Of a stretch of 64,000 bases of DNA, positions 3,462-60,173 are shown in pieces. The stretch covers positions 248,001 to 312,000 of the IMG/VR virus record IMGVR_UViG_3300042923_000569. One strand, written 5' to 3'. The position numbers and the translations under genes are program-made. Below the pieces are notes generated by a model. That model ran no database searches and was not told where the DNA came from. It worked only from the letters and a program-made list of their open reading frames with translations. Within the stretch, counting starts at the first letter, position 1, and each line of letters begins with the position of its first letter.

Positions 3462-3782
3462 TCAATTTAATTTTTCAATTAACCTTTTAAAATGATATAT
3501 AGTAAGACTAACCAAATACCAATAAGCAGAGATAAGAATTCCATATGATAAGTACATGTCTATTGATTGTTCATTTAAAATAAACATGTTTACAAGACTT
3601 AAATTACATAAAATAATTAAAGTATAAGATGCTGGTGTAGAAAGTCTCCACTTAGTTTTGTGTTCTTCTTCATTAAAGTTATTTTTAAAACTTAGTTGAA
3701 GAATCAAACTTAGAACTCCATAAAAGAACAGTACTGATGGAATTAAAGAAACTACAACAACTACAGCTAAAAGAATTTCCAT
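3462..3782 (-). CDS. hypothetical membrane protein
   Basis: Three hydrophobic segments. Confidence 0.7.
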   Translation of the reverse strand: MEILLAVVVVVSLIPSVLFFYGVLSLILQLSFKNNFNEEEHKTKWRLSTPASYTLIILCNLSLVNMFILNEQSIDMYLSYGILISAYWYLVSLTIYHFKRLIEKLN

Positions 3783-3831
3783 ATAAAATATCCTATAAAA
3801 AAAGGGAGATAATTATATCTCCCTATGATTG

Positions 3832-13343: not shown

Positions 13344-14348
13344 TTATTCGAAGTTAATATTATTACGTACTACAATGCGACGTACTTTATCCATCATATC
13401 ATTGTAGCGACGGGATAGAGTTGCTTTTGAAGTTACAAACTTTCCTTTACCATCAATATAACCAGAAGTAATTACTTCGTCAAAGGTATGAACACGATAC
13501 CCGTCAAGGCCATGTACTAAACCTAATAGAACTCGTTCATGTTCTTCAAGTTCATCCATAATTTCTTCCATCACTGCAAGAAAATCTTTACTCAAACAAC
13601 GTTCATCTACAACGTAGTCTGCACTTTCACCTGGTATAATATCTTTTAGAGTTTGTTCTGAACCTTCTTCTGAACGGTTCATTGGCGTATCAATACTAAA
13701 AGTATTACTGTTATAATTCATAATACGTTTTACTGCACGGATATCGATCCCGGTTGCTTCTGAAATTTGTTCGTTTGTTGGATAGCCATTGCTATCAGAA
13801 ATGAAACGTTCAATGAATGATTGAATTTTAATATTACTTACAGAAAGATGTTCTGGTAGTGCAACCATCCGTACATCATTGTTGCCGTTACGATACATGT
13901 ACTGACGGATTGCAGTAGTAGCATAAGTACTAAACATTGTACGGAAAGATGGATCAAAACCATAGATTGCTTTCATCAATCCTTCGAATCCATATTGTAC
14001 TTTATCTTGGAATGGAATGTTACAAGTACAGTTCTTTGCTTCAGTATAAACTAAACCACTATTATAAAGTACTAGTAGTTTTTTAGATTCTTCTACATCT
14101 TCACCTGATTGGATCTTACGAATAAGTTCTTCATTGCTCACATATTCACGCGACTTTACAGAAGCTTTAATTTTATCCATAGTTAAATCAGAAGAGGAAG
14201 TATTATCTTCTTGTTTTGTTTCTTCTTCTAAATCAAGCGAACCTAGATTATCCAGATTTGTTGTTTCTTCTTCAAAGCATTCGTTTAGTACTTCTTCCTG
14301 AATTTCTTCTAAGTTTAGCTTTTTAATGCTCACATTTTCTCCGAACAA
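13344..14348 (-). CDS. RNA polymerase sigma-70 family factor
   Basis: Region 2 signature LVLYNSGLV...QDKVQYGFEGLMKAIYGFDPSFRTMFSTYA...RMVALP; region 3 PTNEQISEATG...SIDTP; TTG start uncertain. Confidence 0.9.
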   Translation of the reverse strand: MFGENVSIKKLNLEEIQEEVLNECFEEETTNLDNLGSLDLEEETKQEDNTSSSDLTMDKIKASVKSREYVSNEELIRKIQSGEDVEESKKLLVLYNSGLVYTEAKNCTCNIPFQDKVQYGFEGLMKAIYGFDPSFRTMFSTYATTAIRQYMYRNGNNDVRMVALPEHLSVSNIKIQSFIERFISDSNGYPTNEQISEATGIDIRAVKRIMNYNSNTFSIDTPMNRSEEGSEQTLKDIIPGESADYVVDERCLSKDFLAVMEEIMDELEEHERVLLGLVHGLDGYRVHTFDEVITSGYIDGKGKFVTSKATLSRRYNDMMDKVRRIVVRNNINFE

Positions 14349-26199: not shown

Positions 26200-27447
26200 T
26201 CACGACACGGCTTCTGTGTCAAGCCTAGAAATGAATTCTTCGGCATTATCTTTACATTCCAAGAAAAGTGCTTGTAAATCACAACCAGCTTTCGTTGAGA
26301 ATGTAATATCAGGTATATTTGCATCAGGGTACATTAGTTTAATATATTCCTTGATTTCAATATCTTCTAGATATGGTATTTCATATATATAATCAACCCT
26401 TCCTTTACGCACTACTGCTGGATCAACTTTTTCAAGATGGTTAGTAGTTAAGAAGATGATAGTACCGTTCAACGAAATCACACCATCTAGTACATTAAGA
26501 ATTTTTGATAGGCTTAACATTTCCATATCAAAGATATTATCGGATTGTGCTTTTGTTTCACGGTCATGAACTGCACTACATGAATCAAAGTCTTCAATCA
26601 GTACTATACTATTAGGTGGAATAGTACTCATTGCTTTTTCAAATGATTTATTACTCATAGTTGATAAATCAATGATACAAATATTTTTATTAAAGTTAGA
26701 TGCAATTGCTTTAATAGTACTACTCTTACCAGTGCCAGGTTTTCCATGTAAAATATAAGTTTGTTTACATGCTAGACCACGAGATGTGTACCAATCAGGA
26801 TTACTATAGAAGTACTCTAGGTTTTCTAGAATTTTATCTTTAATTTCTTTTTTGAGAATTACAGAAGATAATGGACGCTTCTTAACACTTGTCAAGTACT
26901 TCCAGTCTTCACCAGCAATTGTATAAATTCCCATATCGTCTTTCTTTGGTTTATATGCGAAGTCCTGTATTAATGCCATAATAGGCTTTTGGCTTCGACC
27001 AAAGGTTTTAATTACAATATGTTGCTTTTCTTTTTCTGAACCCTGTGAGTTTAAAGATGTTTTTTCAAACCAGAATAATCTTTTATTATAGAAGAAGAAG
27101 TGTTTACCATACCCTGCACCTACCACGTATGACTCATTATTATCGTTATCACTGTACCAACCGGTATTACCATCAAGAGATAAGTATCTAGACCATTTAG
27201 CATATGGTGATTTTAAAAACCAAGACATAAAAGCTTTAAACTGAGTCTCGTTTCCGGTATGTCCTGCGTTATTAAACTCTAAACTTGTCAGTACCTGTCT
27301 TTTTACAAACATAATAAATGTTGGAATAAACTTTAGACAGTACGTTAATACACCTAATCCCCATAATGAAACTGCCCCTGCTAACCAGGGATAGGTTTTC
27401 ATTGCCAGTACTAACTGTGCGTATAATCCCGCAACAAACTCGAACAT
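26200..27447 (-). CDS. BCS1-like AAA+ ATPase with N-terminal TM segment
   Basis: RPLSSVIL...WYTSRGL...Walker A GKPGTGKS, Walker B VLIEDFD, LNVLDG, TTNH..KVDPAVVRKGRVD. Confidence 0.9.
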   Translation of the reverse strand: MFEFVAGLYAQLVLAMKTYPWLAGAVSLWGLGVLTYCLKFIPTFIMFVKRQVLTSLEFNNAGHTGNETQFKAFMSWFLKSPYAKWSRYLSLDGNTGWYSDNDNNESYVVGAGYGKHFFFYNKRLFWFEKTSLNSQGSEKEKQHIVIKTFGRSQKPIMALIQDFAYKPKKDDMGIYTIAGEDWKYLTSVKKRPLSSVILKKEIKDKILENLEYFYSNPDWYTSRGLACKQTYILHGKPGTGKSSTIKAIASNFNKNICIIDLSTMSNKSFEKAMSTIPPNSIVLIEDFDSCSAVHDRETKAQSDNIFDMEMLSLSKILNVLDGVISLNGTIIFLTTNHLEKVDPAVVRKGRVDYIYEIPYLEDIEIKEYIKLMYPDANIPDITFSTKAGCDLQALFLECKDNAEEFISRLDTEAVS

Positions 27448-39478: not shown

Positions 39479-39725
39479 CCTGCATATCTTGCAAGCGTTT
39501 CATGATTTCATCAATGAAAATCATAGCTTGTTCTTCTGATAGATTATCAGGAATTTCTAAAATCAGTTCACCTGACTCTTTCCCACTTTCAATCATATCA
39601 CGTAAACAATTATTAATCTGTTCTGCGAAATCTTCTGCGGATAGTTCAATTTTTGGTACTTCATTCATGTATGCAAAATGCATAAAATTAGTAGTCATAT
39701 AACTCTCAATAATGCTGGAATCCAT
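39462..39725 (-). CDS. hypothetical acidic protein
   Basis: ORF; start probably MTTNF. Confidence 0.65.
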   Translation of the reverse strand: MDSSIIESYMTTNFMHFAYMNEVPKIELSAEDFAEQINNCLRDMIESGKESGELILEIPDNLSEEQAMIFIDEIMKRLQDMQDDSDE

Positions 39726-39777
39726 TTTGAAGTTTTCAATTAACAGTTGAGTTCATTATGGTTGCTGATAGATTCCA
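39716..39777 (-). ncRNA. GAAUC/CAGCAA-module RNA A (minimal, Asn GUU anticodon-loop mimic)
   Basis: TGGAATC-TA-TCAGCAACCA...TCAA-CTGTTAA-TTGA...GATTCCA. Confidence 0.7.
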
Positions 39778-40194: not shown

Positions 40195-40222
40195 AATATT
40201 ACCTTTGTGCTTGTTTAATTTG

Positions 40223-40305
40223 AGCGGAATACAGGATTCGAACCTGCGTAAACTATTCGCCTCTTGCTTGGAAGGCAAGTGCTCTACCAACTGAGCTAAT
40301 CCCGC
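40223..40305 (-). tRNA. tRNA-Gly(UCC) with long variable region
   Basis: CTTGC-CTTCCAA-GCAAG; U73; 15-nt variable region AGGCGAATAGTTTAC. Confidence 0.88.
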
Positions 40306-40793: not shown

Positions 40794-40847
40794 TAGAATC
40801 TATTGTTTTTCATATATCCAATGATGTTTGATTGCTGTTAGATTCTA
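40794..40847 (-). ncRNA. GAAUC/CAGCAA-module RNA B (minimal)
   Basis: TAGAATC-TA-ACAGCAATCA...TCAT-TGGATAT-ATGA...GATTCTA; near-identical to 41113-41166. Confidence 0.7.
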
Positions 40848-41112: not shown

Positions 41113-41166
41113 TAGAATCCATCTTTTTTCATATATCCAATGATGTTTGATTGCTGTTAGATTCTA
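41113..41166 (-). ncRNA. GAAUC/CAGCAA-module RNA C (minimal)
   Basis: Direct repeat of RNA B. Confidence 0.7.
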
Positions 41167-42170: not shown

Positions 42171-42761
42171 TTATTGACCAAACTTGGTCATAGCTTCTTC
42201 TAGTGTATATGAATTTACAACTTTAATAGATGCAACATTGTATATTATTACGAATACTTCACCATTATTAAACTTGTACGTATAAGCATCATACCCAAGT
42301 TGTGTTAATGCACGAACAAATTGCGTCGGATGACTGTTATACCAATCATACCATACTGACATAAGTGCATCATACATACTATCTTCACTCATATAATTAT
42401 CGAGTGCAGTACGAATAGCACGATTTTTGTCTTCGTCCCAATTTGTATATGCTTCATCATCAGGAGTATTCTGTATTAATTTTAGCAGTACTGCCTTGTT
42501 AATTTTCTGACTTTTTGATAGTTCTTTTCTTATTGTCAATTCACATTCATAAATCATACCCGTAGGGGATTTTTCACAATACCCACGTGCAGTAATTGGA
42601 TTAGATGTGAAATATATACCTGGCCCGTATTCATCGTTACCTCTACCAACGAATTCATCGCTGAATTGTGAAATTGGATTTTGTGTACCATGATAATAGT
42701 AACCGGATAGTTTACCTTCCATGATAGAAGATATATCTTCCATCAATTTTTTCATTTGCAT
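42171..42761 (-). CDS. putative ADP-ribosyltransferase-fold protein
   Basis: YYHGT...YGPGIYFTSN...ARGY...LGYDAY...E.FVIIYN (H-Y-E type ART pattern). Confidence 0.65.
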   Translation of the reverse strand: MQMKKLMEDISSIMEGKLSGYYYHGTQNPISQFSDEFVGRGNDEYGPGIYFTSNPITARGYCEKSPTGMIYECELTIRKELSKSQKINKAVLLKLIQNTPDDEAYTNWDEDKNRAIRTALDNYMSEDSMYDALMSVWYDWYNSHPTQFVRALTQLGYDAYTYKFNNGEVFVIIYNVASIKVVNSYTLEEAMTKFGQ

Positions 42762-43434: not shown

Positions 43435-43459
43435 GCAATATTTCCTTTATTATAATTGC

Positions 43460-43580
43460 TGGAATTCATTTAATTTTTGACCGCTGCGTCTACCGATTTC
43501 GCCACTTGCACCGAAGTGCAAGGCAGGACTCGAACCTGCAAAAAGCTGTTTGCTATTAGTGTGTTTGCTGCTGAATTCCA
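43460..43580 (-). ncRNA. GAAUC/CAGCAA-module RNA D (circularly permuted tRNA mimic)
   Basis: TGGAATTC-A-GCAGCAAACA...T-arm GCAGG-TTCGAGT-CCTGC, acceptor CTTGCAC-TTCG-GTGCAAG, D-arm TGGCGAAATCGGTAGACGC...GAATTCCA. Confidence 0.85.
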
Positions 43581-43590
43581 AATTTATTAT

Positions 43591-43667
43591 TGGTGGGAAT
43601 AACTGGACTCGAACCAGTGACCTCTCCCTTATCAGGGGAGTGCTCTAACCAACTGAGCTATATTCCC
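43591..43667 (-). tRNA. tRNA-Ile(GAU)
   Basis: CTCCC-CTGATAA-GGGAG; CCA encoded. Confidence 0.95.
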
Positions 43668-44672: not shown

Positions 44673-44731
44673 TGGAATCCACATAGTCAAAGTAAAAGTT
44701 TGAGTTTTTGTGTGGTTGCTGGGGGATTCCA
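44673..44731 (-). ncRNA. GAAUC/CAGCAA-module RNA E (minimal, Lys UUU anticodon-loop mimic)
   Basis: TGGAATC-CC-CCAGCAACCA...TCAAA-CTTTTAC-TTTGA...GATTCCA. Confidence 0.72.
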
Positions 44732-45237: not shown

Positions 45238-45395
45238 GAATTCTATAGTAATCGAACATACTACCTTTAACACGGTTCAATATGACTTATTTATATATCC
45301 CAAGTCACCAAGTGATTACGAAGGGAGTTTTACGTCCGAGTAACCAATCCATTATTGTATGATTTTAGATTGTTTTATGTTTGCAGTGAGAATTC
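45238..45395 (-). ncRNA. GAAUC/CAGCAA-module RNA F (divergent, longer cargo)
   Basis: GAATTC-TC-ACTGCAAACA...GAATTC closing ~145 nt with internal hairpins. Confidence 0.55.
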
Positions 45396-45423: not shown

Positions 45424-45527
45424 AAGAATCGGGTTTTTCTGTGCCTCGTAACCAACGATGAAAGGGAATTGAACCCTAAGCGGTTTTCGCCAAATGAAAT
45501 AAGATTTATGGTTGCTGTGCGATTCTT
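45424..45527 (-). ncRNA. GAAUC/CAGCAA-module RNA G (permuted, Gln UUG-like loop)
   Basis: AAGAATC-GC-ACAGCAACCA...TTTC-ATTTGGC-GAAA, T-arm AGGG-TTCAATT-CCCT, D-like TCGT-TGGTT-ACGA...GATTCTT. Confidence 0.75.
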
Positions 45528-45974: not shown

Positions 45975-46092
45975 GAAATCTTTTCTATACGGTCATCCAG
46001 ACACAGCCTAAAAAGCAACATGGCTGCTGGGGGATCGAACCCCACCGTTTTTCATAGCAGGAAAAAAGTTTTTATGTTTGCTGTAAGATTTC
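45975..46092 (-). ncRNA. GAAUC/CAGCAA-module RNA H (permuted tRNA mimic, Ser GCU loop)
   Basis: GAAATC-TT-ACAGCAAACA...TTTTTC-CTGCTAT-GAAAAA, T-arm TGGGG-TTCGATC-CCCA, acceptor hairpin GCAGCC/GGCTGT, D-arm GTC-TGGAT-GAC...GATTTC. Confidence 0.8.
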
Positions 46093-46105
46093 GATATTGC
46101 TTCGT

Positions 46106-46212
46106 GCAGCGACAAGGATTTGAACCTACGTGATATTAAGAGAAACCTTCTCTACTTAATTCATTACCAGTGATCGATTTACTAATGAATCGCGTCAATC
46201 ACCATCCCGCTA
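46106..46212 (-). ncRNA. tRNA-like RNA with enlarged anticodon and variable arms
   Basis: Acceptor TAGCGG/TCGCTG, T-loop AGG-TTCAAAT-CCT, arms TTCATTA/TAATGAA and AGAGAA/TTCTCT. Confidence 0.5.
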
Positions 46213-46223
46213 AACTTACTTAT

Positions 46224-46253
46224 ATTATACCACAATTTTTTCTACCGTTTCAT
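46224..46253 (-). promoter_or_regulatory. WTGAAAC-type phage promoter
   Basis: ATGAAACG...TGTGGTATAAT at the head of the 45.0-46.2 kb RNA cluster. Confidence 0.78.
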
Positions 46254-48700: not shown

Positions 48701-50062
48701 TTACCACTCTACACCGACACCAGCACCCCAAAGTACTTCGGACTGTGTGTTGGTACTGACCGTCACTTTCGTGGTTACAGCTTGGTTTACACGAGAACTG
48801 AAGCCTACTGCCACAGCCTGTTCACCATCATAACCACCTACGCCTGCACCCAGCATGAAATTACCATCGCGGGTTACCTGGGGAATGTTCGCCATAGCAC
48901 CGGCACCGGCAATACCTGCACTTGCAAGTTTACGGTTATCGCCCATACGTTTATCAATATCAGAGAAACGTTTGTTATTTTTGTAATCGCTGTTGTTCAT
49001 GCGATCTTCAACTTTACCAATACGCTGAGTGTTACTGGTGATACGTTCGTCATGATCAACCAGAGTACTGTCATTGTTATCGATACGTTTACTTAACACA
49101 GCATCAGCACTTTTACGCGACGATGTTTCAGCAGTTACTGAGCGTTGTACAGAAGATACCGCAGCGGTACGTTCAGTACTTTCATCGTTGATCTGTTGTG
49201 CCAATGCTTTATCTGCGTTACCACGAGTAGTGGATTCAGACTGTAATGCATTATCCTGACGTTGTTGATCTTTCAGGAAGGTATTATTATCTACCTTAGT
49301 ACTGATAACAACGTTTTGCTGGTCATCCGTAATACGCTGTTCAGCTTTGTTTTTGTCGATATTGCTTTGCAGCATTTTATCGCCAGAAACACGCTCGGAT
49401 TTTTCAACAATAAGTGCATTACTATTGTCCTGTCCCAGCCGAACACCAATATCAGCAGTGTTTTGTGCATTGATCGCATTGTTGTTGGCATTCTGACCAA
49501 TTTCAATTGCAGTCTGTGCATTATTACCTGCGTTGATTGCATTGTTATTTGCATTATGTGCCAGGTCTTTTGCTTCTTCAACACCGGCTTGTGCAGTGAT
49601 TGCCTTGTTATCGGCTGCCTGACCAATTTCAATTGCAGTTTGTGCATTGGTCATTGCATTGTTAGCGGTGTTTTGTGCATCGCTGGCTTTATTAAAAGCG
49701 TTATGACCGATGTTTTTTGCTTCTTCAACACCTGTCTGACGTTCACTGATTTCTTTCTGAAGTGCATTGTCCTGACGTTGTTGATCAACCTGGAAAACGC
49801 TCTTATCAAGTTTATCTTTTTGGAGGTTTGAAACTTGATATTCTAAATTCTTCCCGGCGGCTTCATTGTACTTAGTTTGAATTTCTTTCCACTGAGTTTG
49901 TTCTTCTTTCCATGCACGATCTTTCTCAGCGAGAAGGTTCGCATCTTGTACTTTATCGTAAGCAGTGGGAGTTTTTACACAACCACAACTTGGATCAATT
50001 GAAGTAGCATGTGCAGAAACTGAACATGCAACAATCGCCATTGCAATCAATGTCTTTTTCAT
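48701..50062 (-). CDS. YadA-family trimeric autotransporter adhesin
   Basis: Signal peptide MKKTLIAMAIVACSVSAHA (start reassigned), coiled-coil stalk with repeats, anchor GIAGAGAMANIPQ...GAGVGGYDGEQAVAVG...GAGVGVEW. Confidence 0.9.
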   Translation of the reverse strand: MKKTLIAMAIVACSVSAHATSIDPSCGCVKTPTAYDKVQDANLLAEKDRAWKEEQTQWKEIQTKYNEAAGKNLEYQVSNLQKDKLDKSVFQVDQQRQDNALQKEISERQTGVEEAKNIGHNAFNKASDAQNTANNAMTNAQTAIEIGQAADNKAITAQAGVEEAKDLAHNANNNAINAGNNAQTAIEIGQNANNNAINAQNTADIGVRLGQDNSNALIVEKSERVSGDKMLQSNIDKNKAEQRITDDQQNVVISTKVDNNTFLKDQQRQDNALQSESTTRGNADKALAQQINDESTERTAAVSSVQRSVTAETSSRKSADAVLSKRIDNNDSTLVDHDERITSNTQRIGKVEDRMNNSDYKNNKRFSDIDKRMGDNRKLASAGIAGAGAMANIPQVTRDGNFMLGAGVGGYDGEQAVAVGFSSRVNQAVTTKVTVSTNTQSEVLWGAGVGVEW

Positions 50063-50189
50063 TTTTATTACCCTGGTGTGCCGCCACATTTGGCGTGAGG
50101 TAATAATACCGTGTCGAAACATTTCGGTCAACACATTTTTTAATATAATTCAAAGAAAACTTAACCCAAATTTACATTAAAAAAGATAT

Positions 50190-51389: not shown

Positions 51390-51513
51390 TGGCGGCGAGT
51401 ACTGGATTCGAACCAGTGACCAGGACATTAAAAGTGTATGAGTTATGGTTGCTGCGGGAATCCAATCAGGATTCCTTGGGTTCTACCTGCTCTACCAACT
51501 GAGCTAACTCGCC
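51390..51513 (-). ncRNA. tRNA-Lys(UUU) interrupted by a 48-nt GAAUC/CAGCAA module (RNA I)
   Basis: Removing 51438-51485 gives a 76-nt cloverleaf with GGACA-CTTTTAA-TGTCC and CCA. Confidence 0.88.
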
Positions 51514-53678: not shown

Positions 53679-53692
53679 GATATTACCATTTG

Positions 53693-53803
53693 TGCAAGGT
53701 GCAGGATTCGAACCTGCGTTACGTTCTTGAAATGAAAGTTATGTATGCCGTAAGATTCCATCTGGAATCGCTTTTCGTGTCCTAACCACTAGACGAACCT
53801 TGC
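53693..53803 (-). ncRNA. tRNA-Glu(UUC) interrupted by a 39-nt GAAUC/CGGCAU module (RNA J)
   Basis: Removing 53737-53775 gives a cloverleaf with CGTTC-ATTTCAA-GAACG and a Glu-type D-arm TCGTCTAGTGGTTAGGAC. Confidence 0.85.
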
Positions 53804-59611: not shown

Positions 59612-59721
59612 TGCATAAAGTAGGGTTCGAACCTACAAGGGAACCTCGCGGCTGCTCCCGAAGTCCTATCTTCGCTTTCGCTATTGTCGGACTCTCCGTT
59701 TACCAATTCCGGCATTTATGC
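59612..59721 (-). ncRNA. tRNA-Leu-like RNA with 22-nt anticodon loop
   Basis: Acceptor GCATAAA/TTTATGC-A, Leu-type D-arm, GAGTCC-[22 nt]-GGACTT, long variable arm, canonical T-arm. Confidence 0.8.
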
Positions 59722-60098: not shown

Positions 60099-60173
60099 TG
60101 GTGCCCCTGACAGGATTCGAACCCGCGAATCACGGTTTTAGGGACCGCTGTTCTACCATAGAACGGCAGGGGC
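60099..60173 (-). tRNA. amber suppressor-like tRNA (CUA)
   Basis: GCGGT-CCCTAAA-ACCGT; full cloverleaf and CCA; C8 and C33 are non-canonical. Confidence 0.75.

What the first reader, a model, noticed from the sequence alone, without database searches (positions are those of the whole stretch)
43460..43580. Circularly permuted tRNA with the acceptor stem capped by a C(UUCG)G tetraloop
Seen: order 5' module, T-arm (GCAGG-TTCGAGT-CCTGC), 3' acceptor strand CTTGCA, CTTCGG, 5' acceptor strand TGCAAG, Leu-type D-arm (TGGCGAAATCGGTAGACGC), closing GAATTCCA. It cannot be aminoacylated as transcribed. This is the T-acceptor-D order known for YrlA (established), here with a non-YrlA terminal motif.
Basis: partly seen in the sequence, partly recalled or inferred. 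Interest (0 to 1): 0.85.

Follow-up and report, generated by a model that had tools for sequence, protein, structure and literature searches.

The report
Phage tRNA-mimic Y-like RNA cassette
The 120-base element is a real, conserved tRNA look-alike RNA with its ends swapped and its acceptor end sealed; it belongs to a large, unannotated family of phage RNAs that sit next to the gene of a Ro60-like ring protein, so it is most likely that protein's "Y RNA" partner and not a decoding tRNA.

Summary
The order is a closing stem, a CAGCAA linker, the T arm, a 7-bp acceptor helix capped by UUCG, a Leu-type D arm, an A-rich linker, and the other strand of the closing stem.

- **Conservation.** The element has unannotated orthologues in Rak2/GAP32-like jumbo phages. 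It is one of at least 10 related cassettes in the window.
- **Shared module.** The cassettes share a 7-9 bp covarying stem P1, then (U)ACAGCAA, then an A-rich 3' linker, then a G after the stem. This module occurs in many unrelated phage contigs and encloses hairpins or permuted tRNA bodies.
- **Structure support.** Covariation is strong: 96% of cells pair against 63% in shuffles, 20 of 22 pairs show double changes, and the 15-48 Levitt pair covaries.
- **Partner gene.** The module is syntenic with a DUF2828+vWA protein whose predicted fold matches Ro60/TROVE. Of 80 loci chosen by the protein alone, 57 carry cassettes on the gene's strand, usually just upstream. All relatives carrying the element encode this protein.
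- **Family placement.** The Rfam YrlA model matches only the tRNA-like part, below threshold, and the YrlA Ro-binding motif is absent.

Verdict: a YrlA-type tRNA mimic with a new docking module for a divergent phage Ro-like protein. The function is inferred, not shown.

The parts
43573..43580 (-). P1 5' strand (UGGAAUUC) of the closing stem
   Evidence: It pairs with 43460-43467. P1 covaries across the family; all 7 pairs show double changes.
43550..43572 (-). 5' linker that starts with the family motif AG-CAGCAA (43572-43565)
   Evidence: The motif is found 6 times in the window, all on the minus strand, against 0.53 expected. Family consensus.
43540..43549 (-). ACAGC (tRNA positions 39-43, 3' strand of the anticodon-stem remnant) plus UUUUU (44-48)
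   Evidence: It pairs with GCGGU 43480-43484 with a G.A mismatch at 29.41. Compensatory AUAGC/GCUAU in GAP32, XbC2 and Kaldavass. U48 pairs with A15.
43523..43539 (-). T arm GCAGG / UUCGAGU / CCUGC
   Evidence: 99% paired, and 4 of 5 pairs show double changes.
43505..43522 (-). 7-bp acceptor helix CUUGCAC/GUGCAAG capped by UUCG
   Evidence: All 7 pairs show double changes across the family. Caps vary: tetraloops, or N73-CCA plus a spacer, in other phages.
43485..43504 (-). U8 G9, Leu-type D arm GCG/AAAUCGGUAGA/CGC, A26
   Evidence: 91% identical to enterobacterial tRNA-Leu over 33 nt. D stem 99% paired. A14 and GG conserved.
43468..43484 (-). GCGGU (positions 27-31) plus the A-rich 3' linker CAAAAAUUAAAU
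   Evidence: an A-rich tract before P1 3' is a family feature.
43459..43467 (-). P1 3' strand GAAUUCCA followed by the conserved G (43459)
   Evidence: G after P1 in 93% of 98 distinct cassettes.
43591..43667 (-). tRNA-Ile(GAU) immediately upstream; the likely co-transcript that defines the 5' side of the RNA
   Evidence: A 10-nt spacer.
39716..39777 (-). Short cassette A (P1 + CAGCAACCAUAA + hairpin with loop CUGUUAA)
   Evidence: R1 26.4 bits.
40795..40846 (-). Short cassette B, 5 nt upstream of tRNA-Gln
41113..41166 (-). Short cassette C (paralogue of B)
44673..44731 (-). Short cassette E (hairpin UCAAA-CUUUUAC-UUUGA, a Lys-UUU-like loop)
   Evidence: Near-identical in XbC2.
45424..45527 (-). 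Long cassette F (P1 AAGAAUCG/CGAUUCUU; T-arm-like, no D arm)
45238..45395 (-). Long cassette I (P1 GAAUUCU/AGAAUUC, motif variant CUGCAA)
   Evidence: identical in L014.
45975..46092 (-). Long cassette G (P1 GAAAUCUU/AAGAUUUC; T arm UGGGG-UUCGAUC-CCCCA)
51393..51513 (-). Inside-out form H: tRNA-Lys(UUU)-like gene carrying the module (hairpin + CGCAGCAACCAUAA) between positions 28 and 29
   Evidence: XbC2 orthologue with a different hairpin sequence.
53688..53802 (-). Inside-out form J: tRNA-Glu(UUC)-like gene with a 38-nt module insert at the same position

Best explanation
The element is a gene for a small non-coding RNA of the Y-RNA/YrlA type: a tRNA mimic that does not decode.

**Making the RNA (inferred).** It is transcribed with the phage's tRNA cluster, directly behind tRNA-Ile. 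It is cut out by the tRNA-processing and AU-site nucleases.

**Fold (shown by sequence and covariation).** The two ends pair in a 7-8 bp stem, P1. This stem closes a tRNA-like L-shaped body made of an anticodon-stem remnant, a T arm, a 7-bp acceptor helix sealed by UUCG, and a D arm.

**Docking (inferred from synteny).** P1, the adjacent ACAGCAA-containing 5' linker, the A-rich 3' linker and the following G form a module shared by a large phage RNA family. I infer that this module is the docking site for the phage's Ro60-like ring protein (Pfam DUF2828 + a vWA domain). This parallels the way the stem and internal loop of Y RNAs dock on Ro60.

**Function (inferred by analogy).** The exposed tRNA-like body would then recruit or occupy tRNA-recognising factors. 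Candidates are processing or repair enzymes, an exoribonuclease as in Ro-Y RNA-PNPase complexes, or host tRNA-targeting defence nucleases. This would serve RNA quality control or counter-defence during infection.

No binding, expression or function has been shown.
For: **Anatomy and tRNA likeness.**

**Orthologues in eight or more Rak2-like phages, with compensatory changes.**
- P1 changes from GGAAUUC/GAAUUCC to AGAAUCU/AGAUUCU or GGAAUUU/AAAUUCC.
- The inner helix changes from ACAGC/GCUGU to AUAGC/GCUAU.

**Covariation on 50 distinct sequences.**
- 96.2% of cells pair, against 63% in shuffles and 36-46% when partners are slid.
- 20 of 22 pairs have double changes.

**The module is shared whatever it encloses.**

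**The partner protein has a Ro60 fold.**
- Pfam DUF2828 + DUF7788/vWA.
- AlphaFold model with pLDDT 78.8.
- The top nine PDB matches are all Ro60/TROVE, E 1e-6 to 5e-4, aligned over the full length.

**Synteny.**
- 7 of 22 cassette loci carry the gene.
- Of 80 loci picked by the protein alone, 57 have cassettes on the gene's strand: 131 cassettes against 3 on the other strand and 1 in shuffles.
- 117 of those cassettes lie upstream. In 28 loci the nearest one ends 11-113 nt before the start codon.
- Cassettes lie directly upstream of the gene in Listeria phage AG20 and just downstream, in the tRNA array, in Felixounavirus momo.

**All relatives with the element encode the protein.**

**Sub-threshold YrlA matches on several family members.**

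**Literature.**
- The Felixounavirus Bas63 Ro60-like gp130, upstream of that phage's tRNAs, counters the Ppl defence system. The authors guessed that some of the 'tRNAs' are Y RNAs (PMC11482910).
- The Ro60 of phage phiLo binds neighbouring Y-like RNAs and host PNPase (PMC12135203).
Against: - No expression, end-mapping or binding data exist for this RNA or this protein.
- In the Rak2-like phages the Ro-like gene lies about 200 kb from the cassettes, and none is next to it. The link there rests on family membership.
- The YrlA Ro-binding motif is absent, and the YrlA model scores only 25.7 bits against a threshold of 69.
- The alignment used for covariation was fitted to the model, which favours pairing.
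- Part of the family keeps full anticodon arms and an encoded N73-CCA. That fits real tRNA precursors as well as mimics.
Confidence: 0.65

Rival explanations
1. It is a circularly permuted tRNA gene, as in the red alga Cyanidioschyzon merolae. The P1/ACAGCAA module brings the transcript ends together. An endonuclease and an RNA ligase excise it and make a circle. RNase P and 3' trimming/CCA addition then open the acceptor cap to give a working tRNA.
For: - The same module occurs as an insert at position 28/29 in normal-order tRNA-Lys and tRNA-Glu genes of the window. In XbC2 the insert is conserved with a changed hairpin.
- In other phages many long forms keep a full anticodon stem-loop.
- 6 of 32 long forms encode N73-CCA right after a 7-nt acceptor strand, where 0.5 is expected.
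- The acceptor helix is 7 bp.
- Rak2-like phages encode two RNA ligases (PMC5259590), and RtcB lies near the Listeria phage locus.
Against: - This element and all its orthologues have no anticodon loop; the linker sequences where one should be are not conserved.
- The cap is a tight 4-nt UUCG with no discriminator or CCA.
- It combines a Leu-type D arm with a 5-nt variable loop.
- The window's insert-bearing Lys(UUU) and Glu(UUC) genes duplicate ordinary copies.
- No splicing endonuclease or bulge-helix-bulge motif is evident.
- Short cassettes with only a hairpin cannot give a tRNA.
Confidence: 0.07
2. It is a free-standing tRNA decoy that works without the Ro-like protein. A stable, end-protected tRNA body (and, in the short cassettes, anticodon-loop mimics) would soak up host tRNA-cleaving or tRNA-modifying defence enzymes. 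P1 would serve only to stabilise the RNA.
For: - Short cassettes in at least five unrelated phage lineages carry a Lys-UUU-type loop CUUUUAA/C.
- Stable tetraloop caps (UUCG, GAAA, GUAA) argue for selection of a closed, nuclease-resistant form.
- Phage tRNA clusters are generally linked to evasion of anticodon nucleases (PMC7824862).
Against: - It does not explain the invariant ACAGCAA motif and the G after P1.
- It does not explain the tight, strand-specific synteny with the Ro-like gene.
- It is partly compatible with the best explanation rather than exclusive of it.
Confidence: 0.13
3. It is a cis-acting element of the polycistronic transcript: a processing or punctuation signal, or a 5'-UTR stabiliser or terminator for the downstream 75-aa ORF (43434-43207). 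It would not be a trans-acting RNA.
For: - Cassettes sit at gene boundaries, often a few nt before a tRNA or 20-30 nt before a start codon.
- The flanks are AU-rich.
- The downstream UUUUAAUUAAG motif is part of the translation initiation region.
Against: - The promoter/terminator scan finds nothing at the cassettes.
- A tRNA-like tertiary fold with a covarying Levitt pair is not needed for punctuation.
- Synteny with the Ro-like gene.
- Tandem arrays with no ORFs between the cassettes.
Confidence: 0.1
4. It is a non-functional scar: a rearranged remnant of tRNA-Leu genes produced by recombination between repeated sequences in a plastic tRNA region.
For: - The region is full of odd tRNA-like genes.
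- GAP32 carries a visibly degraded extra copy (L003 1506-1609).
Against: - The element is conserved across phage genera with compensatory changes in all helices and kept tertiary pairs.
Confidence: 0.05

Closest known systems
YrlA (Rfam RF02553), the tRNA-like Y RNA of Salmonella, Mycobacterium smegmatis and mycobacteriophages (Chen et al. 2014, PMC4201824)
   Same: - The 5' and 3' ends pair in a stem next to a large internal loop.
- The other half is a tRNA mimic in the order (V)-T arm-capped 'acceptor' stem-D arm, with tRNA tertiary pairs including a covarying 15-48 pair.
- There are several paralogous RNAs per genome.
- The genes lie beside a Ro60-type gene (seen here in other phages carrying the module).
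- M. smegmatis YrlA also has a 7-bp acceptor helix.
   Different: - There is no GNCGAAN0-1G motif; the conserved single-stranded motif is ACAGCAA, with an A-rich opposite strand and a G after the stem.
- It scores 25.7 bits against a gathering score of 69, and only over model positions 24-84.
- The partner is a DUF2828-type Ro-like protein, not a canonical TROVE protein.
- In this phage lineage the RNA genes sit in the tRNA cluster, far from the protein gene.
- The family also includes hairpin-only forms and forms embedded in normal-order tRNAs.
Thermus phage phiLo Ro60 with Yrl1/Yrl2 (PMC12135203; PDB 9KOP, 9L5Y)
   Same: - A phage-encoded Ro60-fold protein with small RNAs encoded just upstream.
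- A stem plus an internal loop carrying a short conserved motif.
- 9KOP is the best structural match of the DUF2828 model.
   Different: - phiLo's protein is an annotated TROVE protein, and its RNAs carry the CGAA motif.
- No tRNA-like domain was reported for them.
Circularly permuted tRNA genes of Cyanidioschyzon merolae, some green algae and Thermofilum (my own knowledge; reviewed in PMC4090602, found)
   Same: - The 3' half of a tRNA is encoded upstream of the 5' half.
- The transcript ends are brought together by pairing.
- In parts of the family the acceptor 3' strand is followed by CCA and a spacer.
   Different: - Those genes have a bulge-helix-bulge junction cut by the archaeal/eukaryal splicing endonuclease and yield decoding tRNAs.
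- Here there is no BHB and no anticodon loop.
- The acceptor is sealed by a tetraloop.
- The setting is a bacterial virus.
Two-piece (permuted) tmRNA genes
   Same: The gene order T arm-acceptor 3' strand-linker-acceptor 5' strand-D-like region, closed by a terminal helix.
   Different: - There is no tag reading frame or pseudoknots, and the element is far too short.
- Rfam permuted-tmRNA scores 9.9 bits.

Membership tests
YrlA (RF02553) | tRNA-like domain in the order T arm - capped acceptor-like stem - D arm, with tRNA tertiary signatures | tested here: met
YrlA (RF02553) | Reaches the Rfam gathering score over the whole model | tested here: not met
   25.7 bits against 69, and only model positions 24-84 of 114. 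Relatives score 34-38 bits.
YrlA (RF02553) | Terminal stem carrying the Rsr-binding motif GNCGAAN0-1G (PMC4201824) | tested here: not met
   The stem is GGAAUUC/GAAUUCC, and the adjacent conserved motif is ACAGCAA.
YrlA (RF02553) | Encoded next to a TROVE (Ro60/Rsr) gene | tested here: not met
   - No TROVE domain among the ten longest window ORFs tested, which include the only two over 400 aa.
- tblastn with Bxz1 Ro finds no Rak2-like phage.
- A divergent Ro60-like DUF2828 gene exists in all relatives, but about 200 kb away.
Y RNA in the broad sense (partner RNA of a Ro60-fold protein) | 80-130 nt, ends paired in a stem beside a large internal loop; genes syntenic with a Ro60-fold protein | tested here: met
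   - About 120 nt; P1 plus asymmetric linkers.
- Family-level synteny.
- Ro60 fold of the protein.
Y RNA in the broad sense (partner RNA of a Ro60-fold protein) | Physically bound by the Ro60-type protein | not testable with these tools
   Needs co-immunoprecipitation or a gel-shift assay.
Canonical tRNA (RF00005) | Contiguous cloverleaf with free acceptor ends and a 7-nt anticodon loop | tested here: not met
   Not called by ARAGORN or the Rfam tRNA model. No anticodon loop.
Permuted tRNA genes (C. merolae type) | The 3' half lies upstream of the 5' half of one tRNA | tested here: met
Permuted tRNA genes (C. merolae type) | All tRNA parts, including the anticodon, are present, and there is a bulge-helix-bulge junction for splicing-type processing | tested here: not met
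   - No anticodon loop in this lineage.
- The junction is a plain 7-8 bp stem with long linkers.
Permuted tmRNA (RF04321) | tRNA-like domain plus a tag-coding region and pseudoknots | tested here: not met
   9.9 bits against 47.

The most novel reading that the evidence does not exclude
The phage Ro60-like protein uses a library of interchangeable RNA 'baits', all carrying the same P1/ACAGCAA docking module. The baits are anticodon-loop mimics (Lys-UUU, Asn-GUU types), sealed tRNA bodies such as this element, and even whole tRNAs carrying the module as an extra arm. With them the protein would capture, neutralise or re-route host tRNA-targeting defence nucleases or tRNA-repair enzymes. That would give Y RNAs' tRNA mimicry a defined purpose. 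A rarer alternative, still open for parts of the family that keep an anticodon arm and an encoded CCA, is that the module marks the first permuted or intron-bearing tRNA genes of bacterial viruses, matured with the help of the Ro-like protein.
Probability: 0.2. Interest if true: 0.88.

Novelty: new variant of a known kind. Interest (0 to 1): 0.72.

Why it matters
**Scale.** Ro60-like DUF2828 proteins occur in more than 700 sequenced phages. These include Felixounavirus, the Listeria phage AG20 group (Pecentumvirus), KVP40-like vibriophages, Campylobacter phages and Rak2-like jumbo phages. One of these proteins has been reported to counter a bacterial defence system (PMC11482910). Its RNA partner had only been guessed at.

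**What the RNA family provides.**
- A concrete, searchable candidate partner with a simple signature.
- Many natural variants of the 'cargo' domain.
- An easily testable system for an open question: what the tRNA-like half of bacterial Y RNAs is for.

**Annotation.** The family also explains a class of mis-annotations, such as 'tRNAs with introns' and odd tRNA calls in phage tRNA clusters. It is absent from Rfam 15.

Tried and rejected
- **Promoter or terminator cassette** (like the promoter-stem-loop cassettes of T4-type phages). The consensus scan finds nothing at the cassettes, and hexamer spacing does not fit.
- **Known ribozymes or riboswitches.** No Rfam family other than YrlA and tRNA matches, even at E up to 10.
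- **T4 stable RNAs C and D as relatives.** They lack the module.
- **Transposon-like element with terminal inverted repeats, or an integron attC site.** The stem sequences differ between copies and covary, there is no consistent target duplication, and the core sites do not match.
- **Canonical TROVE partner.** tblastn with mycobacteriophage Bxz1 Ro found only actinophages and a few others.
- **An anticodon hidden in the linkers of this lineage.** No conserved 7-nt loop can be assembled.
- **MAFFT alignments** misplaced the inner helix and acceptor strands. I therefore used a covariance-model alignment and my own parsing.
- **A broad DNA pattern scan** was unspecific, but it happened to deliver the unrelated loci that revealed the protein link.
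- **BLAST of uncultured cassette loci against cultured phages** gave nothing useful.
- **Burroughs & Aravind 2016** could not be read.

Full report
**1. The observation**

The feature lies on the minus strand, like all 28 tRNA genes of the window: 26 called by ARAGORN and two more by Rfam. Reading from 43580 down to 43460, the order is as follows.

- UGGAAUUC, then AG-CAGCAA, then a 15-nt linker.
- ACAGC, then UUUUU.
- The T arm GCAGG/UUCGAGU/CCUGC.
- CUUGCAC, UUCG, GUGCAAG.
- UG, then the D arm GCG/AAAUCGGUAGA/CGC, then A.
- GCGGU, then CAAAAAUUAAAU, then GAAUUCCA, then G.

The acceptor helix is exactly 7 bp and is closed as C(UUCG)G. ACAGC and GCGGU form the remnant of an anticodon stem (positions 39-43 and 27-31) with a G.A mismatch. 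There is no anticodon loop.

The element starts 10 nt after tRNA-Ile(GAU) (43667-43591). It ends 25 nt before the start codon of a 75-aa ORF (43434-43207) that has no family match. Neither ARAGORN nor the Rfam tRNA model calls it. The minimum-free-energy fold recovers the closing stem, the T arm and the capped acceptor, with a modest z-score of -2.16.

**2. Conservation**

The window comes from an unsequenced relative of the Rak2/GAP32-like jumbo phages. The element has unannotated orthologues at 72-77% identity in:

- Yersinia phages fHe-Yen9-04 and fHe-Yen9-03;
- Serratia phage BF;
- six Erwinia pEa_SNUABM phages;
- Cronobacter phage GAP32.

Xanthomonas phage XbC2 and Erwinia phage Kaldavass give half-length matches (79% identity), and two IMG/VR jumbo contigs also carry copies.

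Most of these genomes hold two paralogues. One has a Leu-type D arm, usually with a long variable arm. The other has a class-I D arm.

Changes are compensatory.
- The closing stem becomes AGAAUCU/AGAUUCU or GGAAUUU/AAAUUCC.
- The inner helix becomes AUAGC/GCUAU.
- The T stem becomes GUAGG/CCUAC.

**3. It is one member of a cassette family**

The motif 'stem strand + CAGCAA' occurs six times in the window, always on the minus strand, where 0.5 is expected. A stem-aware scan raised this to eight free-standing cassettes: A, B, C, D (the finding), E, F, G and I.

All eight have these parts:
- a 7-9 bp terminal stem, P1;
- (U)ACAGCAA right after its 5' strand;
- an A-rich tract before its 3' strand;
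- a G after the stem (93% of 98 distinct cassettes).

The short forms (about 55-75 nt) enclose one hairpin, often with a 7-nt anticodon-like loop: CUUUUAC in E and CUGUUAA in A. The long forms (about 100-150 nt) enclose tRNA parts.

Two further genes carry the same module inside out, as a hairpin followed by CGCAGCAACCAUAA inserted between positions 28 and 29 of otherwise normal genes. These are a tRNA-Lys(UUU) gene at 51513-51393 and a tRNA-Glu(UUC) gene at 53802-53688. The XbC2 orthologue of the Lys gene keeps the linkers but has a completely different hairpin sequence. So it is the structure that is selected.

**4. The family reaches far beyond these phages**

A loose DNA pattern scan of IMG/VR brought in unrelated contigs of 50-385 kb. 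In these the same module appears in tandem arrays beside tRNAs.

There the long forms are complete circular permutations of a tRNA.
- Several keep a full anticodon stem-loop (UCU, GUU, GAA, GUA), with the break at position 26/27.
- The Leu-type forms, like the finding, lack the loop.
- Caps are tetraloops (UUCG, GAAA, GUAA). In 6 of 32 distinct long forms the cap is instead N73-CCA plus a spacer, where 0.5 is expected.

A covariance model built from the finding and three orthologues gave these results.
- It scores the finding at 143.5 bits and the window's short cassettes at 19-26 bits.
- It finds 52 matches at E < 0.01 in 35 sources.

On that alignment:
- 96.2% of cells pair, against 63% in column shuffles and 36-46% when partners are slid;
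- 20 of 22 pairs show changes on both sides;
- the covariation score is 0.639, against 0.168 in shuffles.

The alignment is fitted to the model, which flatters pairing. Even so, the number of distinct pair types per position is large.

tRNA tertiary signatures are kept.
- A14 is present in 31 of 32.
- GG in the D loop is present in 31 of 32.
- The Levitt pair is A15-U48 in 18 and G15-C48 in 11, so 29 of 32 are compatible. None of 10,000 permutations reached that number.

**5. The protein link**

Clustering the ORFs of cassette-bearing loci revealed one recurrent neighbour. It is a protein of about 480 aa on the same strand, present in 7 of 22 loci, with Pfam domains DUF2828 and DUF7788 (vWA-like).

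Evidence that it has a Ro60 fold:
- An AlphaFold model (pLDDT 78.8) has Ro60/TROVE structures as its nine best PDB matches, aligned over the full length at E 1e-6 to 5e-4. They are phage phiLo Ro60 (9KOP), Deinococcus Rsr (2NVO), Xenopus Ro and human Ro60.
- A sequence profile alone barely sees this (E 0.3 to the phiLo protein).

Distribution of the gene:
- tblastn finds it in 711 phage records, several annotated 'Ro-like RNA binding protein'.
- It is in every relative that carries an orthologue of the finding: BF, the pEa_SNUABM phages, Yen9-04/03, GAP32, XbC2 and Kaldavass. It is also in the related phage CBB.
- There it lies about 200 kb from the tRNA region, with no cassette beside it.

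Examples of adjacency in other phages:
- In Listeria phage AG20, three cassettes lie between a promoter-like site and the gene, with RtcB nearby.
- In Felixounavirus momo, the gene is followed by the tRNA array, which holds four cassettes.

The reciprocal test was decisive. Eighty IMG/VR loci were chosen by the protein alone, with these results.
- 57 carry at least one strict cassette on the gene's strand.
- That makes 131 cassettes, against 3 on the opposite strand and 1 in shuffled sequence.
- 117 are upstream. In 28 loci the nearest cassette ends 11-113 nt before the start codon.
- The finding-derived model gives 14 hits in these loci, all on the gene's strand.

This is the yrlA-rsr arrangement.

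**6. Comparison with what is known**

YrlA is defined by three things (PMC4201824):
- a Ro-binding stem with GNCGAAN0-1G;
- a tRNA-like domain in the order V-T-AS-D;
- a position next to rsr.

The finding has the second feature. It fails the first: its motif is ACAGCAA. The Rfam model scores it at 25.7 bits against a threshold of 69, over positions 24-84 only. Relatives score 34-38 bits. It meets the third feature only in a modified sense, because the partner is a divergent Ro60-like protein. Canonical TROVE is absent from the window's large ORFs and from Rak2-like phages by tblastn.

It is therefore not a member of RF02553, but it works like one.

Two papers bear on function.
- Bas63 gp130 is a Ro60-like protein encoded upstream of that Felixounavirus's tRNAs. 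It counters the Ppl defence system, and the authors speculated that some of the 'tRNA genes' are Y RNAs (PMC11482910).
- Thermus phage phiLo Ro60 binds two upstream Y-like RNAs and host PNPase (PMC12135203).

I found no description of the P1/ACAGCAA family or of permuted tRNA-like genes in phages. Rfam 15 has no model for it. Megaphage 'enigmatic tRNA introns' (PMC6784885) may be related; I did not test this.

**7. Mechanism and rivals**

Shown:
- the sequence anatomy;
- conservation and covariation of all helices and of one tertiary pair;
- the shared module;
- its synteny with a Ro60-fold protein.

Inferred:
- the RNA is excised from the tRNA-cluster transcript;
- P1 with its flanking motifs docks on the Ro-like ring;
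- the sealed tRNA body engages tRNA-recognising factors.

The main rival is a permuted tRNA gene that matures into a decoder. For this element that is unlikely. It has no anticodon loop, a 4-nt cap without CCA, and a Leu-type D arm combined with a 5-nt variable loop. It stays open for family members that keep an anticodon arm and an encoded CCA.

The other rivals are a protein-independent decoy, a purely cis-acting processing or stabilising element, and a recombination scar. They are weighed in the rival entries. None accounts for the invariant module together with the synteny.

**8. Verdict**

The element is a new variant of the Y RNA/YrlA kind. It is one copy of a widespread, unannotated phage RNA family that carries a new docking-type module and is tied to a DUF2828 Ro60-like protein. 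Its function remains to be shown.

Noticed in passing
window 51393-51513 (-): A tRNA-Lys(UUU)-like gene with an encoded CCA and a 48-nt insert between positions 28 and 29 of the anticodon stem (hairpin GGAAUCC-UGAU-UGGAUUCC, then CGCAGCAACCAUAA). Rfam tRNA scores it at 47 bits; ARAGORN misses it. It is conserved in XbC2, where it is annotated as a 122-nt tRNA-Lys, with a different hairpin sequence.
   Followed up: partly
window 53688-53802 (-): A tRNA-Glu(UUC)-like gene with a 38-nt insert of the same module at the same position. Both ARAGORN and Rfam at gathering threshold miss it.
   Followed up: partly
window 59612-59721 (-): A Leu-like tRNA (acceptor GCAUAAA/UUUAUGC, long variable arm) whose anticodon stem encloses 24 nt instead of a 7-nt loop. 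It starts 2 nt after tRNA-Leu(UAA) 59808-59724.
   Followed up: no
window 46105-46253 (-): A promoter-like site with a TGAAACG -35 element and an extended -10, the type described for phages CBB and GAP32. A structured RNA of about 110 nt follows it and ends in a T-arm-like motif, just upstream of cassette G.
   Followed up: no
window 60102-60173 (-) and 40222-40305 (-): A tRNA found only by Rfam (50.6 bits) next to tRNA-Arg(CCG), and an unusually long (84 nt) tRNA-Gly(UCC).
   Followed up: no
window 13344-14348, 42171-42761, 48701-50134, 26200-27447 (all -): ORFs with Pfam matches: sigma-70 regions 2 and 3; an ART-PolyVal ADP-ribosyltransferase; a YadA-type membrane anchor; and a BCS1-like AAA ATPase.
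   Followed up: partly
L029 8595-8672 (XbC2_443, annotated tRNA-Glu): A tRNA-like gene whose anticodon arm is replaced by a 9-bp hairpin capped with UUCG, so it has no anticodon.
   Followed up: no
L156 about 3670-3800; L188 about 3640-3730: Further topologies of the family next to the Ro-like gene. In one, the module is inserted at position 26/27 of a normal-order tRNA that has a CCA end. In the other, P1 takes the place of the acceptor stem around a normal-order D-anticodon-T body, with the motif variant CACAGCUAA.
   Followed up: no
L150 2909-3172 (phage T4 rnaC, rnaD): T4's two stable RNAs of unknown function lie at the end of its tRNA cluster. rnaC has a T arm and an acceptor-like end, but neither RNA has the P1/ACAGCAA module.
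   Followed up: partly
KU574722.1 102737-104248 (phage CBB) and MK773491.1 (phage 7t3): The Ro60-like DUF2828 gene is annotated 'structural protein' in these records. That would mean it is carried in the virion. I did not check this against the proteome tables.
   Followed up: no
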